Of a stretch of 35,609 nt of DNA, positions 10,027 through 25,595 are shown one piece after another. The stretch's first letter is position 1. Every line of letters begins with the position of its first letter. The notes under the pieces are model-generated. The model searched no databases, was not told the origin of the DNA, and saw nothing but the letters and a program-made list of their open reading frames with translations. Made by a program: the position numbers and the translations under genes. This stretch comes from Octopus bimaculoides (lineage: Eukaryota), in assembly GCF_001194135.2 (NCBI RefSeq), contig NC_068990.1:74208943-74244551 (forward strand), given 5' to 3'.

Positions 10027-10542
10027 GTTCTTTTATTCTTTTATTCCTTTATTTGTTTCATGATAATCCACTGAGCTATGGGACCCATTGTCTTATGTCA
10101 GACAAAAAAACAAGTCCTCATGTTACATAACCTTTCCTGTGTCTTAATCTTCTTTGTAATTGTTAATGTAAGTGAAGGTACATGGCTTAGTGGTTAGGGT
10201 ATTTGGCTCACAATTGTAAGGTCATGAGTTCAATTTCCAGCAGTGCATTGTGACTAATGCTAGAGCACCACATTTAGTCTAGCATCCTCAGGACTTATTC
10301 TTTGTAAGCCTAGTACTTATTCTATTTGTCTCTTTTACTGAACTGCTAAGTTATGGGGACGTAAACACACCAGCATCGGTTGTCAAGCAATGGTGGGGGT
10401 ACAAACACTGAAACACATACACATAATACATACATACACACATACACACACATACACACACATACACACATGCACGCACACATACACACATACACACATA
10501 CACACACACATACACACACATACACACATGCACGCATGCACG

Positions 10543-19083: not shown

Positions 19084-19159
19084 ATATAATTCTAATGATC
19101 ATTTAATAGTATTATTTATTATTTCATGCTTGCTTTTTAAATTAGTTTAGTACTAGCAT

Positions 19160-19250
19160 GTAGGCATGGAATGACCAAATAATTAAAGACCTTGTGGTTT
19201 GCAACCATAAGGTCTTAGGTTCAATGTCACATCATGGCATCTTGGACAAA
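19160..19250 (+). mobile_element. SINE family B head, truncated at a fold-back junction
   Basis: GTAGGCATGG...CAACCATAAGGTCTTAGGTTCAATGTCAC...CATGGCATCTTGGACAAA. Confidence 0.6.
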
Positions 19251-19258
19251 TTTCCAAG

Positions 19259-19477
19259 ATGCCATGAAACGGTATAACACATAGCTAATGAATGAAAGTG
19301 GGAAGATGGAAACTGTGTAGAAGCACATTGAGTAGATTGTTCATGTAATTTCTGAACAAGACAGACACTGATTCTGTCTTAGAATTACATTAACCCTTTA
19401 ATGTTCAGATCATTCTGTCAAATATAATGCCTATTTATTCATATTATTTTGAATTAATCATGCATTATCTTGTAGAT
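19259..19477 (+). repeat. Local inverted duplicate of 21543-21749
   Basis: Manual alignment gives ~6 substitutions and 2 indels over ~207 bp, spanning a composite SINE-like/unique/MITE junction. Confidence 0.95.
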
Positions 19478-20058
19478 AATGCATGTTTGTCAACCAGAAG
19501 AATGCTAAAGACAAGTACTTCACCAACAACATTTTAGGGTAAACTTGTGTTCTGAGGGTGCTACTTTATCCATCTCCAAATGCAAGTGTCAAATGTTCAT
19601 CAGATAGTGAAGCAGCTTCATAAGTGTTTTGGCCCCTTCCACCACAACACCAAAGTGGCCTGGGAACACCCACCAGAGTAGATGACAAAACTCTCACACA
19701 ATAGCATGAGCTTCATTGAGTCAATTATTGCAACTCTGGGCCAGATGTTTCTACCATCCTCAATGCTCATTCCTTCTACACCACTCACCCTCTCTCTTGA
19801 GCTAGATATAATGGTCTGTTTTCTAAGCTACACACCACACTTTTTGCTATATATTAATTTACTCAATATCTACAGCCAAGTTATATGAATATATGGTATA
19901 TATTTATACCATTTAAATAATAACAACAATAAAATTACCTAATGATCTGAAATATTCTACTGATAATAATATTCTTCATTTAAAACTTTGCAAAATATTA
20001 ATCCTTTCTGTGCAGTTGTTTGGCATAGAATTTTTAAAGAAAGATTTATTTATTTCAG

Positions 20059-20188
20059 GTCTTAGACATCCAACTCAGAGAAACGTCTCTAAAAATTCGT
20101 TATTCACTTATTTATGCTTGTTCATGCAGAAAAGACTTATCCAATATGACAAAAGTGGACAGGCTTAAGAGAAGCTTAAATAGTGAAA
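20059..20188 (+). CDS. Candidate exon, phase 0->1 (VLDIQLRETSLKIRYSLIYACSCRKDLSNMTKVDRLKRSLNSE)
   Basis: Acceptor TTTATTTATTTCAG|G; weak donors at 20183 or 20189. Confidence 0.25.
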
Positions 20189-21417
20189 GTACTTATCTTG
20201 CAATATACTGTGCTATACTGTGGTTTTAATATGATTTCTGTTGACAGAAATGCTGAAGTTAGTGAATTGATGTAAATGTATTTACATGATATCCTTCTTA
20301 AAAATATCTAATTCACTTTATATATAAAACTTGGTTGGAAATAAAGTTTTAGTGGGCTGAATATTACTACAATTGTAATAAATTCATATATTTATTTATA
20401 TATTTATGTATTTATTTATTTCATATTAGAAATATGAAAATACTGACAAGTGCATCTATTCTGTATCTTGTCTTCACTTTAGATTGAGATGAAAATTACC
20501 GAAATTGTCTTCTCTTAAATGGACATTTTTCAATTTCAAAAGCTATTGGATGTAATCTTTAATCTAATAAATATGCCAGGCCTAACAATTTCAGTCATGT
20601 AATTTTTTCCTCTTAATGTGTAGTTCAGCTGGTGCACATATAAATCTATGTCTCCTTAATGATATGTGCTCTTTATTCATTGTAAATTACTGTCAGAAGG
20701 GGACAATAGCTGTTCCAGAAAATGGTACTTTCATATGAATATATGAAAAATTAAAAACGAGACACAGCAAACACACACCCACATACCATAGAGAGCAAAT
20801 AATAATAAAATAAAAATTTAAATAAAAAACATAAATAAATAAACGCAATCACTCTCATGCCGTATTTAATTTGCATTTTTCTTCCTGAAATTGATTTAAA
20901 GCAAGGAGGGTGTGAGTCAGAATAATCTATGTTTGTTCTCTGAAGTTAACTCCTACTTAAACTTATTTTATTAATGCATATGTCATTATGCACATAGATT
21001 TGTTTATATTAGCTGAATCTTCATTATAGAAATACTTTGTTTTGAAACTAACCAGCAACCTTACAATAAACTGAGACTCAGTTAATTTACTAGTTGCTCC
21101 GTGCATTGCAAAAAACAAGATATTTGTATATTATTCTGCAAGTTTGTATCTCTATAATGAGGTTTATTATTGTTTTTCAATAAAGTATGAACGATAATAT
21201 ATAACAGCAGAACTGATTTATATTTCATATAACGTATGTGCAAAAATAGATCTGCTCATTGAGAAGATTGGATGTGATTGCTTAGAATGGAAAAAAACCA
21301 AAATACAGATGAGAGTAATATTGGTGAATCTCTGTTATTTAACAATGGAGATTCAGGTCTTTAATCAGCTGAATTATCTGCTCTTGAATTAATGTGTAAA
21401 TGATCGAAAATCCTCAT

Positions 21418-21620
21418 TTAATCTGGCTATATCCGGCCCAAATATTCTATCTGTTTTATGCTCAAACTAGCCAGATCCAGCATTACACACCAACCCACCA
21501 ATGTCCTTCTAAAATTAAACAATCACATCATTGAAATTTCAAATCTACAAGATAATGCATGATTAATTCAAAATAATAAGCATTACATTTGACAGAATGA
21601 TCTGAACACTAAAGGGTTAA
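21418..21620 (-). mobile_element. MITE family M2
   Basis: Ends CTGAACACTAAAGGG-TTAA; reverse complement of the 13720 family. Confidence 0.75.
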
Positions 21621-21749
21621 TGTAATTCTAAGACAGAATCAGTGTCTGTCTTGTTCAGAAATTACATGAACAATCCACTCGATGTGCTTCTACACAGTTT
21701 CCATCTTCCCACTTTCATTCATTAGCTGTGTTATACCGTTTCGTGGCAT

Positions 21750-22119
<370 letters not shown>

Positions 22120-22125
<6 letters not shown>

Positions 22126-22316
22126 TAGGCACAAGGCCCGAAATTTTGCGGGAGGGGGCCAGTCGATTAAATTGATCACAGTTACTTAATTTGTTGAGCC
22201 CGAAAGGATGAAAGGCAAAGTTGACCTCGGCGGAATTTGAACTCAGAATGTAAAGATAGACAAAATACCACTAAGCATTTCACCTGGCATGCTAACGTTT
22301 CAGCCAGCTCTCCACC
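22120..22316 (-). mobile_element. SINE family A, abutting or fused to the family B copy
   Basis: CTACTCTAGGCACAAGGCCCGAAATTTT...GGATGAAAGGCAAAGTTGACCTCGGCGGAATTTGAACTCAG. Confidence 0.9.
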
Positions 22317-22834
22317 TGAATAATGCAACAAATATTGATGATCATATTTGAACCACAGAACTCTCAGCCAACGGATACACTGTAAACTTCTCAATCTCCA
22401 ACTAAATACGTTTACAGAACTATTCTCTACCTACAAATATATTCCTGCTTATACAAATCTTTCAATGGAGAACCAATTATTTGGGATCTATATCATATCA
22501 CAATCTGCGATAGTATTAACAAGTGGATAAAAAAAAAGCAAAACCAAACAAACAAAAATATGCCCAAGGAAAAAATATAAAATAAACATGACTGTTTTCT
22601 TCCTCAATTTGATGTAAAAATTAGTATTTTACATTGAGAGGTTTGTTAAAAGCACTCTGTCAATATTTAAAATCATTAATAATGATCAATAGTCTTCAGC
22701 CATTTTGCTATAAAAATAAACTCAATTGTAGTGTTGGGGTTATTTATGAAGGAGGACACAATATTGAAATTCCTGCCAAGAGATACTATTCCAGATCAAT
22801 ATATTATATACTGTTATTGACGGCTAATTTATTT

Positions 22835-24645: not shown

Positions 24646-25560
24646 AGAGAGGCTGTGATGGGTAAATTCTCGCCATTTTATATTTTAATCTTGCACATGT
24701 GCATTGTTTGTTTTTGATTTTGTCAACTACACAGTATAGTAGGGTCAGCTGGGCACTGTCCGTTAGAAAAACAGCACCATGATGCAACTCACTCCGCCAG
24801 AAATTTAGAAATGATATGCTGTACTGCTTGGCCTTCATGCTGGAAGCTCCAATATGAATATTTCAGAGTGTTTGGGTGTCAATCTGAGGACAGTGCAGAG
24901 GATTCAGAAAGAGTTGGATGAGTCTAATGGTGATTATGAAGGTATGGCAGCTCGGAAAACTTACTGATTGTTCTGATAAGAAAAGAACTCCTGAATTTGT
25001 TGCTGAGATCCAGGCCATGATTGAAAACGATCCCTCCAATTCAAACAGGTTATTGCCTGGGATATGGGAGTGTCTGAGTTTCTTATCAAGCAGGTGGCGC
25101 ATGAAGACATTTGGTATTCTTCATACAAGATGAGAAAGAGCCAATTTTTATTCCAAGCCATCAAGGACAAGAGAAAAAATCATGCTACGAAGCTTTTGAA
25201 CAAACTGAAGCATCCCCTCTAACTGAACATGCTTTGTTTTTTTTTTAGGTAAGAAAAATTTCTGCCAGGATCAGATGGTGAACACACAGAAAAACTGCTG
25301 GTTTGCTGTGTCCCCAAAACATGTACCGAGAGTGATAAAAATCAAACATCGAGTCAGCATCAAGGTGTTTGGAGTGATCATTAATGATGGTGACATTATG
25401 CTTCCAGTCATCTTCCCACATGGCCTCAAACTCAACACGGAGGTCTACATCAAGTGCTGAGAAGAGGTAGTCTGGGTCAAGAGGGTAGCTGCTGGAAGAC
25501 CCTATGTCTGGCAACAGGACTCTGCTTCATGCCACAAAAGCAGGAGAGCCCAGCCATGAC
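24645..25560 (+). mobile_element. Tc1/mariner element, 3'-truncated transposase pseudogene (maT/DD37D-like by motif)
   Basis: ATG at 24779; broken frames give MMQLTPPE..., DKKRTPEFVAEIQAMIENDPS, KVFGVIINDGDIM and RPYVWQQDSA.CH (second catalytic D). The third D and the right TIR are absent, so DD37D spacing cannot be verified. Confidence 0.85.
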
Positions 25561-25595
25561 TGGGTTCTCTTGCTTTTGTGGCATGTATCTCTCTC

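What the first reader, a model, noticed from the sequence alone, without database searches (positions are those of the whole stretch)
19232..21749. Inverted local duplication with perfect fold-back hairpins at both junctions
Seen: 19259-19477 is an inverted ~96% copy of 21543-21749. Left joint: TCATGGCATCTTGGA-caaatt-TCCAAGATGCCATGA (15-bp stem, 19232-19267), whose last bases ATGCCATGA match the donor's ATGCCACGA. Right joint: CATGCATTATCT-tgt-AGATAATGCATG (12-bp stem, 19459-19485). The donor's MITE continues intact; the copy interrupts a SINE B head. Inference: one repair event with three consecutive switches - snap-back, microhomology jump 2.5 kb away, snap-back - as in MMBIR/FoSTeS or polymerase-theta repair. 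A 10-nt stretch present in the copy and in the 13720 MITE is missing from the donor, so both have evolved since, which argues against an assembly artefact.
Basis: partly seen in the sequence, partly recalled or inferred. Interest (0 to 1): 0.7.

Follow-up and report, generated by a model that had tools for sequence, protein, structure and literature searches.

The report
Small inversion with duplicated, hairpin-scarred breakpoint
The inverted 219-base duplicate and its two perfect junction hairpins are real and unique in the genome, but they mark a roughly 2.3-kb DNA inversion that duplicated its own breakpoint, a known kind of repair scar in non-coding repeat DNA, rather than a copy pasted in from 2.5 kb away.

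Summary
Block X (19259-19477) is an inverted copy of X' (21543-21749): 202 of 207 aligned bases match, with three indels. The block occurs only twice in the 2.34-Gb assembly. Its two ends carry the only two perfect hairpins in the window that are not low-complexity.

The left flank (19159-19252) and X together form one collinear copy of a rare SINE, which I call E. X' plus the end of the spacer form one intact piggyBac-type MITE followed by E's 3' region.

The order left flank + X + reverse complement of the spacer end aligns in single BLAST matches with E copies on other chromosomes. So both "old" joints are ancestral, and one E element has been split. The 2.07-kb spacer is therefore inverted, and X was duplicated at the breakpoint. 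This is the structure of the staggered-break inversions described in Drosophila.

The new joints are:
- 19477/19478, which carries an 8-nt snap-back insertion.
- 21749/21750, a blunt joint that falls exactly at the end of a young SINE unit of about the same age as the duplication. This hints at a retrotransposition-linked break.

Both copies have mutated since the event, so an assembly artefact is unlikely. This is a clear example of a known mutation class, of modest interest.

The parts
19159..19252 (+). L: the head (5' part) of SINE copy 'E', a rare subfamily of the abundant tRNA-type SINE-A. It is ancestrally contiguous with X.
   Evidence: A MAFFT alignment with SINE-A and E-family copies and the nhmmer SINE-A profile hit at 19195-19316, model 26-145, both place it here. 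L shares subfamily-specific bases with the head of L065 (TTTGCAA.CATAAG.TCT.AGGTTCAAT).
19232..19267 (.). Hairpin 1: a perfect 15-bp stem with a 6-nt loop. The left arm matches the SINE family consensus. The right arm (19253-19267) has been rewritten as the reverse complement of the left arm. Its last 9 nt are the first 9 nt of X.
   Evidence: Family copies read tcttgta-tcatagc or similar at the right-arm position. The profile alignment shows almost no matches there, but the length is conserved.
19259..19477 (+). X: one copy of the duplicated breakpoint block. It consists of the SINE E body and spacer (19259-19389), a TTAA (19390-19393) and the first 84 nt of a piggyBac-type MITE (19394-19477).
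19459..19485. Hairpin 2: a perfect 12-bp stem with a 3-nt loop. Bases 19478-19485 (AATGCATG) are absent from X'/MITE and are the reverse complement of 19459-19466. They extend a 4-bp ATCT/AGAT mini-hairpin that already exists in X'.
   Evidence: The MITE consensus and X' both continue with TTGAAATTTC instead.
19478..21542 (-). M: the 2,065-bp spacer, inferred to be inverted relative to its ancestral orientation. Its right end carries, in reverse orientation, the rest of the MITE (about 21410-21542) and the 3' region of SINE E (about 21326-21409).
   Evidence: The reverse complement of 21542->21250, joined to L+X, aligns collinearly with paralogous copies L003, L073, L063, L069 and L075. The MITE is collinear across position 21543.
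21543..21749 (-). X': the second, inverted copy of the breakpoint block. It is contiguous with the rest of the MITE on its left. It carries private deletions of 10 nt and 2 nt.
21750..22090 (+). A young SINE-type unit ('SINE-2') with its microsatellite. Its terminal ACTCTT(TT) repeat begins exactly at the X' boundary, so this is the right-hand new joint (21749/21750) with no microhomology.
   Evidence: Genome copies are 94-98% identical and start at query positions 1-2. The number of terminal repeat units varies among copies. This copy differs from the consensus at 3 of 183 positions.

Best explanation
One copy of a SINE about 400 bp long (E), with a piggyBac-type MITE embedded at a TTAA, once lay intact as L - X - rest of MITE - E 3' region - about 1.8 kb of downstream DNA.

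A single break-and-repair event then inverted the roughly 2.3-kb stretch that begins at X. The break on the X side was staggered, or was re-synthesised, so X was retained at the left and also carried along in inverted form. This gives L-X-[spacer inverted]-X'-R.

The tract of new synthesis that recreated X at the left is bounded by two snap-back scars:
- At its start, the 3' end folded back on the SINE's own quasi-palindrome. It wrote 15 nt complementary to the left arm, then continued into X.
- At its end, the 3' end ...ATCTTGTAGAT folded on its 4-bp mini-hairpin and added AATGCATG. It was then joined to the flipped far end of the segment, possibly through an ATG/CAT microhomology.

The other new joint, X' to R, is blunt and lies exactly at the terminus of a young SINE unit of similar age. 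The initiating break may therefore have been a retrotransposition (target-primed reverse transcription) break whose end was resected and remodelled.

What is shown: the structure, the two ancestral contiguities, the uniqueness of the block, the hairpins, and mutation after the event.

What is inferred: that it was one event rather than two, the polymerase or pathway involved (Pol-theta-like end joining versus replicative template switching), and the link to the SINE insertion.
For: 1. X and X' are the only two copies in the genome. They are the only inverted repeat of >=88% identity within 11 kb.
2. L+X is one collinear SINE. The profile hit covers 19195-19316 = model 26-145, and the MAFFT alignments agree.
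3. M-end + X' is one collinear MITE of about 207 bp, with the consensus TIR CCCTTTAGC... and TTAA.
4. The reconstructed order L+X+rc(21542->21250) matches paralogs in single HSPs. L003 covers reconstructed positions 72-506 (E = 1.5e-55) and L073 covers 176-513 (E = 2e-59). MITE-less copies L063, L069 and L075 join 19350 to rc21400-21314.
5. The right flank 19478-19760 has no E or SINE-A homology. A query made of the two joined flanks finds no paralog that spans the joint.
6. Hairpins occur only at X's two ends. They are far above background and are absent at the ends of X'.
7. X carries >=3 private transitions. X' carries private 10-nt and 2-nt deletions.
8. X' ends at the exact terminus of a repeat unit that is 1.6% diverged. 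X and X' differ by 2.4%, or about 1.2% per lineage.
9. Precedents exist in the literature. Inversions with inverted breakpoint duplications of median 321 bp are explained by staggered breaks (PMC1885836). L1 insertions are accompanied by local inversions and inverted duplications through resected, self-annealed ends (bioRxiv 10.1101/2024.12.14.628481).
Against: - No orthologous pre-event allele could be examined. The ancestral order rests on paralogous repeat copies of 67-73% identity.
- Only the last ~230 nt of the spacer can be shown to be inverted. Orientation of the other 1.8 kb is inferred.
- In a pure staggered-break model the L|X joint is not a new joint, so hairpin 1 needs an extra assumption: either snap-back at the start of fill-in, or an earlier template-switch mutation that then became the break site.
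- No target-site duplication was found for the young SINE unit in either the present or the reconstructed arrangement. The same search found none in typical copies either, so the test was uninformative.
- The orientation of that unit, and so whether 21750 is its 5' or 3' end, is unresolved.
- The age match rests on 5 and 3 substitutions.
Confidence: 0.7

Rival explanations
1. Two-step origin. First, an inverted copy of X was made by templated (snap-back or template-switch) repair and inserted about 2 kb downstream, at the end of the then uninverted spacer next to the SINE unit. Later, homologous recombination between the two inverted 219-bp copies flipped the spacer.
For: This gives exactly the same final structure. 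Inverted repeats of 219 bp at 97.6% identity and 2 kb apart can flip their spacer. The 8-nt snap-back joint would be the joint of the first step.
Against: It needs two events where one suffices. It does not explain why hairpins flank X rather than the supposedly new copy X'. No priming microhomology for a fold-back of the spacer's end onto X could be found by reading the sequence.
Confidence: 0.12
2. X is a copy of 21543-21749 inserted into the head of an unrelated SINE through snap-back, a microhomology jump (ATGCCAYGA) and a second snap-back. The spacer was never inverted.
For: Hairpins flank X on both sides. There is an 8/9 microhomology at the left joint, and the one mismatch in X pairs perfectly with the hairpin's left arm. 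The MITE is intact only on the X' side.
Against: It requires that a head-only copy and a headless copy of the same rare SINE subfamily lie 2.3 kb apart in opposite orientation. Only 15 candidates for that subfamily were found genome-wide. It also requires that the insertion restored collinearity to within about 2 nt. By my estimate the chance of this is 1e-3 or less. There is no remnant of the target SINE's body to the right of X. The coincidence of X' ending at a repeat terminus stays unexplained.
Confidence: 0.07
3. A fold-back (palindromic) duplication of X plus the spacer, followed by an asymmetric deletion across the palindrome centre. The deletion removed the original spacer copy.
For: Fold-back inversions from hairpin-primed ends are well known. 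The 19477/19478 joint with its 8-nt templated insert would be a typical deletion joint.
Against: It needs a 2-kb palindrome intermediate plus a deletion that removes one arm exactly back to X. Hairpin 1 remains unexplained. It takes more steps than an inversion.
Confidence: 0.05
4. An assembly or amplification artefact, meaning a chimeric inverted join.
For: Inverted chimeras with short hairpin joints are typical of strand-displacement amplification and of some long-read library artefacts (from my own knowledge).
Against: The two copies differ by 5 substitutions and 12 nt of indels. The private changes are polarised against the MITE consensus. Both copies sit in unique, coherent contexts.
Confidence: 0.03
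5. A foldback-type transposon with 219-bp terminal inverted repeats and structured ends.
For: The outline is two inverted terminal blocks around a 2-kb core.
Against: The block is not multicopy, with exactly two copies in 2.34 Gb. There is no target-site duplication (TCCAAG on one side, ACTCTT on the other). The 'terminal repeat' is made of pieces of a SINE and a MITE.
Confidence: 0.01

Closest known systems
Inversions flanked by inverted duplications of breakpoint sequence (staggered-break model; Ranz et al. 2007, PMC1885836)
   Same: An inverted segment is bounded by two inverted copies of sequence that was single-copy before the event. The duplication is at one breakpoint only, a case that paper also describes. 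The size of 219 bp falls within their 46 bp to 1.9 kb range, with a median of 321 bp. As in their cases, the copies then diverge by substitutions and small deletions.
   Different: Here the inverted segment is only about 2.3 kb, whereas theirs are chromosomal inversions. It lies wholly in repeats. Perfect hairpin scars are preserved at both ends of one copy. No ortholog was available to prove the ancestral order.
Retrotransposition-associated local inversions and inverted duplications from remodelled ORF2p-induced break ends (bioRxiv 10.1101/2024.12.14.628481)
   Same: Genomic DNA of hundreds of bp to a few kb is inverted or inversely duplicated directly next to a retroelement insertion. That work explains this by resection and self-annealing (hairpins) of the 3' overhang, followed by a blunt end-joining step. 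Here X' abuts the exact terminus of a young SINE unit with 0 bp of homology.
   Different: Those cases are somatic or experimental human L1 events with the TSD-like overlap preserved. Here the case is a fixed germline SINE in an invertebrate. No TSD-like overlap was found, the element's orientation is unresolved, and simultaneity is only suggested by similar divergence.
Snap-back synthesis in alternative end joining (SD-MMEJ / polymerase theta; PMC5728401, PMC4912351, PMC2943611 listed)
   Same: The inserted bases at the joint are the reverse complement of the adjacent flank and are primed from a short pre-existing inverted repeat (ATCT-tgt-AGAT). Synthesis is short, at 8 nt, and a new microhomology may have been used for the final join.
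   Different: The left scar, with 15 nt rewritten, is followed by continued synthesis of at least 219 nt. That is longer than typical templated inserts. Enzyme dependence cannot be tested from sequence.
Short template-switch mutations that turn quasi-palindromes into perfect hairpins (Loytynoja & Goldman 2017, PMC5453318; Monttinen & Loytynoja 2022, PMC8794818)
   Same: Hairpin 1 is a clustered, length-conserving replacement of about 15 nt by the reverse complement of the neighbouring sequence. It creates a perfect stem inside an otherwise diverged SINE.
   Different: Here the rewritten arm coincides with the boundary of a 219-bp duplication, and a second hairpin sits at the other boundary. 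So it is probably part of a larger rearrangement rather than an isolated event.
MMBIR / FoSTeS complex rearrangements
   Same: There are several consecutive template changes, an inverted copy of nearby sequence, and short or no homology at the joints.
   Different: The net product is an inversion with breakpoint duplication, not an insertion of a distant copy. A replicative origin cannot be told apart from break-and-join using this sequence.

Membership tests
Inversion with inverted breakpoint duplication (staggered-break type) | Two inverted copies of one block bound the rearranged segment. | tested here: met
   X (19259-19477) and X' (21543-21749) are 97.6% identical. They are the only inverted repeat of >=88% identity within 11 kb.
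Inversion with inverted breakpoint duplication (staggered-break type) | The block was single-copy before the event, and each copy keeps one ancestral neighbour. | tested here: met
   L+X forms one collinear SINE, and M-end+X' forms one collinear MITE plus the SINE 3' region. Paralogs show the undivided order. This rests on paralogs, not an ortholog.
Inversion with inverted breakpoint duplication (staggered-break type) | The intervening segment is inverted relative to an outgroup. | tested here: inconclusive
   This is shown only for the last ~230 nt of the spacer (21326-21542), through the repeat structure. The other 1.8 kb has no orientation marker, and no related genome is available.
Snap-back templated insertion (SD-MMEJ / Pol theta type) | The junction insert is the reverse complement of the adjacent flank and is primed from a short inverted repeat. 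| tested here: met
   AATGCATG (19478-19485) is the reverse complement of 19459-19466. The ATCT/AGAT primer hairpin pre-exists in X' and the MITE.
Snap-back templated insertion (SD-MMEJ / Pol theta type) | Dependence on polymerase theta or another named polymerase. | not testable with these tools
   Sequence alone cannot identify the enzyme.
Retrotransposition-associated inversion or inverted duplication | A retroelement terminus lies exactly at a rearrangement breakpoint. | tested here: met
   Family copies begin at query positions 1-2, which is 21750-21751, with variable ACTCTTTT units.
Retrotransposition-associated inversion or inverted duplication | The insertion and the rearrangement are simultaneous. 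| tested here: inconclusive
   The element is 1.6% diverged from its consensus, and X/X' are about 1.2% per lineage. These are compatible, but they rest on 3 and 5 substitutions.
Retrotransposition-associated inversion or inverted duplication | A TSD-like overlap between the two break ends. | tested here: inconclusive
   No TSD was found for the present or the reconstructed flanks. None was found for typical copies with the same search, so the test lacked power.
MMBIR / FoSTeS | Microhomology at each template switch. | tested here: inconclusive
   The left joint has 8/9 nt (ATGCCAYGA). The 19485/19486 joint has at most about 3 nt (ATG), which is not verifiable. The 21749/21750 joint has 0 nt.
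Short template-switch mutation (quasi-palindrome correction) | A cluster of changes is explained by the reverse complement of nearby sequence, with length conserved. | tested here: met
   The right arm 19253-19267 differs from the family consensus at most positions but is perfectly complementary to the left arm. The profile alignment shows a net indel of about 1-2 nt.
Foldback / long-TIR transposon | Multiple genomic copies with the same ends and a target-site duplication. | tested here: not met
   Only two copies of the block exist in 2.34 Gb. The flanks TCCAAG and ACTCTT are unrelated.

The most novel reading that the evidence does not exclude
The inversion, the 219-bp breakpoint duplication, both snap-back hairpins and the young SINE insertion were all made in one germline event. 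A retrotransposition-induced break end was resected, folded back and re-synthesised before being joined to, or priming, the SINE cDNA.

That would be a naturally fixed, non-mammalian example of the break-end remodelling so far described for human L1 in cell lines and tumours. It would point to SINE/LINE activity as a source of micro-inversions in a repeat-rich genome.
Probability: 0.3. Interest if true: 0.55.

Novelty: new member of a known kind. Interest (0 to 1): 0.35.

Why it matters
This is a well-preserved natural record of how a small inversion forms. All four joints can be read base by base:
- two ancestral contiguities that repeat structure can prove;
- one joint with an 8-nt snap-back insert;
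- one blunt joint at a retroelement terminus.

It shows that nested repeats, here a MITE inside a SINE, can stand in for an outgroup when reconstructing a rearrangement. It also gives a concrete search pattern for finding more such events: a short inverted local duplicate, junction hairpins and a young SINE end.

There is no sign of a gene or regulatory function. The value lies in the mutational mechanism, not in biology of the locus.

Tried and rejected
- **Continuation of the interrupted SINE to the right of X.** By eye, GTCAACCAGAAG...AAAGACAAGTAC resembled the SINE body. Neither the nhmmer SINE-A profile with filters off (--max, E<=10) nor BLAST against E-family loci finds anything in 19478-19760. 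Rejected.
The joined flanks were searched genome-wide. No hit spans the joint.
- **ACTCTT ACTCTT at 21750 as a templated insert.** Rejected, because it is the normal terminal repeat of the SINE-2 family.
- **TSD of SINE E.** AGTACTAGCAT before 19160 matches ATTACTCTCAT after about 21326 (reverse complement) at 8 of 11 positions (by eye). Given the search space this is not significant.
- **TSD of the young SINE unit.** Nothing was found for the window copy or for 11 other copies. Inconclusive.
- **RNA gene scans.** The tRNA scan and Rfam scans of the region gave nothing meaningful: a mir-9449-like hit at hairpin 2 has E = 0.96.
- **Orientation of the SINE-2 unit.** In the best 11 copies it is followed by a reverse-complement SINE-A at about 96% identity, which suggests a minus-strand composite with an (AAAAGAGT)n tail. 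But window copy 10180-10464 has the same body behind a plus-sense tRNA-like head. The window's right-hand head is an older family at 82-87% identity. Unresolved.
- **Fold-back priming of the spacer's 3' end on X.** The required complementarity is not there, judged by reading the sequence.
Full report
**Setting.** The window is G000:C10:74208943-74244551 of a 2.34-Gb, 145,327-contig animal assembly. The window is AT-rich (24-44% GC per kb) and packed with SINEs, MITEs and microsatellites. From memory the SINEs look like those of octopus. No tool confirmed the species, and nothing below depends on it.

**Observation.** A local alignment puts 19259-19477 against the reverse complement of 21749-21543.
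- 202 of 207 aligned bases are identical.
- There are gaps of 2, 8 and 2 nt.
- I call the two copies X and X', the 2,065-bp spacer M (19478-21542), the left flank L and the right flank R.

- 19232-19267 has a 15-bp stem and a 6-nt loop.
- 19459-19485 has a 12-bp stem and a 3-nt loop.

They are the only perfect hairpins in the window that are not low-complexity. Markov simulations expect 0.07 per window. Folded as single-stranded DNA they give -16.6 and -11.1 kcal/mol, with z-scores of -7.1 and -5.8, while the two ends of X' do not fold. In 233 kb of other loci from the same genome such hairpins occur about once per 39 kb. Two of them at the two ends of one 219-bp block is not chance.

**Copy number.** Whole-genome searches find the block only twice. 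These used X with flanks, X' with flanks, and the non-MITE part of X (19262-19392).
- The last ~85 nt of X belong to a MITE family with thousands of copies.
- The non-MITE part of X (searched as 19262-19392) has only about a dozen relatives, at 73-87% identity.

This is not a transposon.

**What the pieces are.**
- *The MITE.* The consensus from 34 copies is about 210 bp and flanked by TTAA. Its ends are CCCTTTAGC... and ...GCTAAAGGG, which is the piggyBac type. It is full length and collinear at about 21410-21616, running across the X' boundary at 21543. X contains only its first 84 nt (19394-19477) plus the TTAA (19390-19393).
- *The SINE across the left joint.* A profile built from 47 copies of the abundant tRNA-type SINE-A was trained with the locus masked. 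It aligns 19195-19316 to model positions 26-145 in one piece. It runs straight through the supposed left joint with a net length difference of about 2 nt.
- *The subfamily.* MAFFT alignments with the relatives found show that L and X belong to one rare subfamily, which I call E. E has a characteristic 3' extension, GGAAACTGTGTAGAAGC...GTAATT...CTGATTCTG..GAATTACATTAA.
- *The 3' region.* Copies that lack the MITE (L063, L069, L075) continue after that TTAA into sequence which, in the window, lies at 21409->21326 in reverse orientation. It ends in ...CTGAATCTCCATTGTTAAATAACAGAGATTC, followed by a CA-type tail in other copies.

**The key test.** I joined L + X + the reverse complement of 21542->21250 and compared the result with the paralogs.
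- L003 (C5:33.51 Mb) matches positions 72-506 in one HSP (E = 1.5e-55).
- L073 (C3:44.12 Mb) matches 176-513 in one HSP (E = 2e-59).
- L065 covers head, body and spacer across the L|X joint.
- L063, L069 and L075 bridge from 19350 to rc21400-21314 without the MITE.

So L|X and M|X' are both ancestral contiguities of one E element that carried the MITE. Today that element is split into a head-plus-X part in plus orientation and an X'-plus-remainder part in minus orientation, with X present in both. The right flank 19478-19760 has no E or SINE-A homology. A query made of the two joined flanks finds no paralog spanning the joint.

That model needs a head-only copy and a headless copy of the same rare subfamily lying 2.3 kb apart in opposite orientation. 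It also needs the insertion to have restored collinearity to within about 2 nt. I estimate the chance of this at no more than about one in a thousand.

The parsimonious history is L-X-N-R -> L-X-M-X'-R, where M is the reverse complement of N. That is an inversion of about 2.3 kb with X duplicated at the breakpoint. This structure was described for 17 of 29 Drosophila inversions. There the duplications ranged from 46 bp to 1.9 kb (median 321 bp), often at one breakpoint only, and were explained by staggered breaks with fill-in (PMC1885836).

**The joints.** The new joints are X|M and X'|R.
- *X|M.* Here X' and the MITE consensus continue with TTGAAATTTC. X instead continues with AATGCATG, the reverse complement of 19459-19466. 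This extends the ATCT-tgt-AGAT mini-hairpin that already exists in X'. It is a textbook snap-back templated insert (literature listed). The spacer sequence that follows, TTTGTCAACC, could have been reached through an ATG/CAT microhomology, but that cannot be verified.
- *X'|R.* This joint is blunt. R begins with ACTCTTACTCTTTTACTTG, which I first took for a templated 6-nt repeat. Genome copies at 94-98% identity start at the same base and carry one to three ACTCTTTT units. So it is the true terminus of a young repeat unit. This copy differs from the consensus of its nearest relatives at 3 of 183 positions, or 1.6%. X and X' differ by 2.4%, or about 1.2% per lineage.

**Hairpin 1.** Its left arm matches the family consensus. 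Its right arm (19253-19267) matches the consensus almost nowhere, yet it is a perfect complement of the left arm, and length is conserved. So the right arm was rewritten from the left arm, as in quasi-palindrome correction or short template-switch mutation (PMC5453318, PMC8794818).
- Its last 9 nt are shared with X', as ATGCCACGA. So either the rewriting preceded or accompanied the duplication, or those 9 nt are ancestral and served as the landing microhomology after snap-back.
- In the second case the single T/C difference would be mechanistic, since X pairs perfectly with the left arm. One of five substitutions falling in 9 nt is not significant, however.

My preferred reading is that both hairpins bound the tract of new synthesis that recreated X on the left fragment: snap-back at its start and snap-back at run-off. 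Alternatively, hairpin 1 pre-existed and was the break site.

**Link to retrotransposition (inference).** A breakpoint falling within 1 nt of a repeat terminus has roughly a 1% chance. The ages agree. Recent work on human L1 describes exactly this class: insertions accompanied by inversions of genomic DNA, for example 917 bp, or by inverted duplications. That work explains them by resection and self-annealing of break ends, followed by blunt joining (bioRxiv 10.1101/2024.12.14.628481).

I could not find a TSD-like overlap. I also could not settle the unit's orientation.
- In the 11 best copies the unit is followed, after the microsatellite, by a reverse-complement SINE-A that is equally young. 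This suggests a minus-strand composite whose 3' tail is (AAAAGAGT)n.
- Yet the same body follows a plus-sense tRNA-like head at 10180-10464.
- To the right of 22127 the window copy switches to an older head family.

Either orientation is compatible with the published class.

**Age and artefact.** Polarising against the MITE consensus and the E family gives the following.
- X has at least three private transitions.
- X' has private 10-nt and 2-nt deletions.

It still deserves a long-read check.

**Rivals.**
- A two-step path gives the same structure: an inverted copy of X placed at the far end of the spacer, then a flip by recombination between the copies. It cannot be excluded (0.12).
- A fold-back palindrome followed by an asymmetric deletion is possible but needs more steps (0.05).
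- An artefact (0.03) and a foldback transposon (0.01) are nearly excluded.

**Verdict.** The feature is a micro-inversion with a duplicated, hairpin-scarred breakpoint, in repeat DNA with no identified function. It is a new example of a known kind of structural mutation. The possible coupling to a SINE insertion is interesting and testable. Interest is 0.35.

Noticed in passing
window 19390-19477 and 21410-21620; L003 (C5:33.51 Mb) 1382-1829; L073 (C3:44.12 Mb) 1486-1842: The piggyBac-type MITE sits at the same TTAA of SINE E in three copies on different chromosomes. Three other E copies (L063, L069, L075) have the empty TTAA. Either a SINE kept amplifying with a DNA transposon embedded in it, or that TTAA is a hot insertion site.
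   Followed up: partly
window 21750-22127 and loci L077-L087: The young 'SINE-2' unit, its microsatellite and a reverse-complement SINE-A body are copied together at about 96% identity in 11 of 11 best genomic copies. The ACTCTTTT terminal units vary from 1 to 3. This looks like a composite SINE built tail-to-tail. Its transcription sense is unresolved.
   Followed up: partly
window 22127-22317 (minus strand): To the right of the microsatellite, the window copy switches to a different tRNA-like SINE head family (rc: ...GCTGAAACGTTAGCATGCCAGGTGAAATGC...). It is only 82-87% identical to its genomic relatives, so it is older than the adjacent unit.
   Followed up: partly
window 25528-25585: An imperfect palindrome with arms of about 27 bp (CATGCCACAAAAGCAGGAGAGCCCAG / CTGGGTTCTCTTGCTTTTGTGGCATG) and a short loop. 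Its origin is unknown.
   Followed up: no
window 19346-19389 (and its copy in X'): A quasi-palindrome inside SINE E's 3' extension (GTAATTTCTGAACAAGACAGA ... TCTGTCTTAGAATTAC). It is present in degraded form in other E copies, so it belongs to the family and is not part of the rearrangement.
   Followed up: partly
window 19524-19844: A repeat family of about 300 bp, with genomic copies at 70-76% identity. It begins about 46 nt to the right of the X|M joint. It was not classified.
   Followed up: no
window 10180-10464: A SINE with a clear tRNA-like head (A- and B-box-like motifs). It shares its body (GGACTTATTCTTTGTAAGCCTAGTACTTATTC...) with the SINE-2 unit, which points to modular SINE families that swap heads and bodies.
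   Followed up: no
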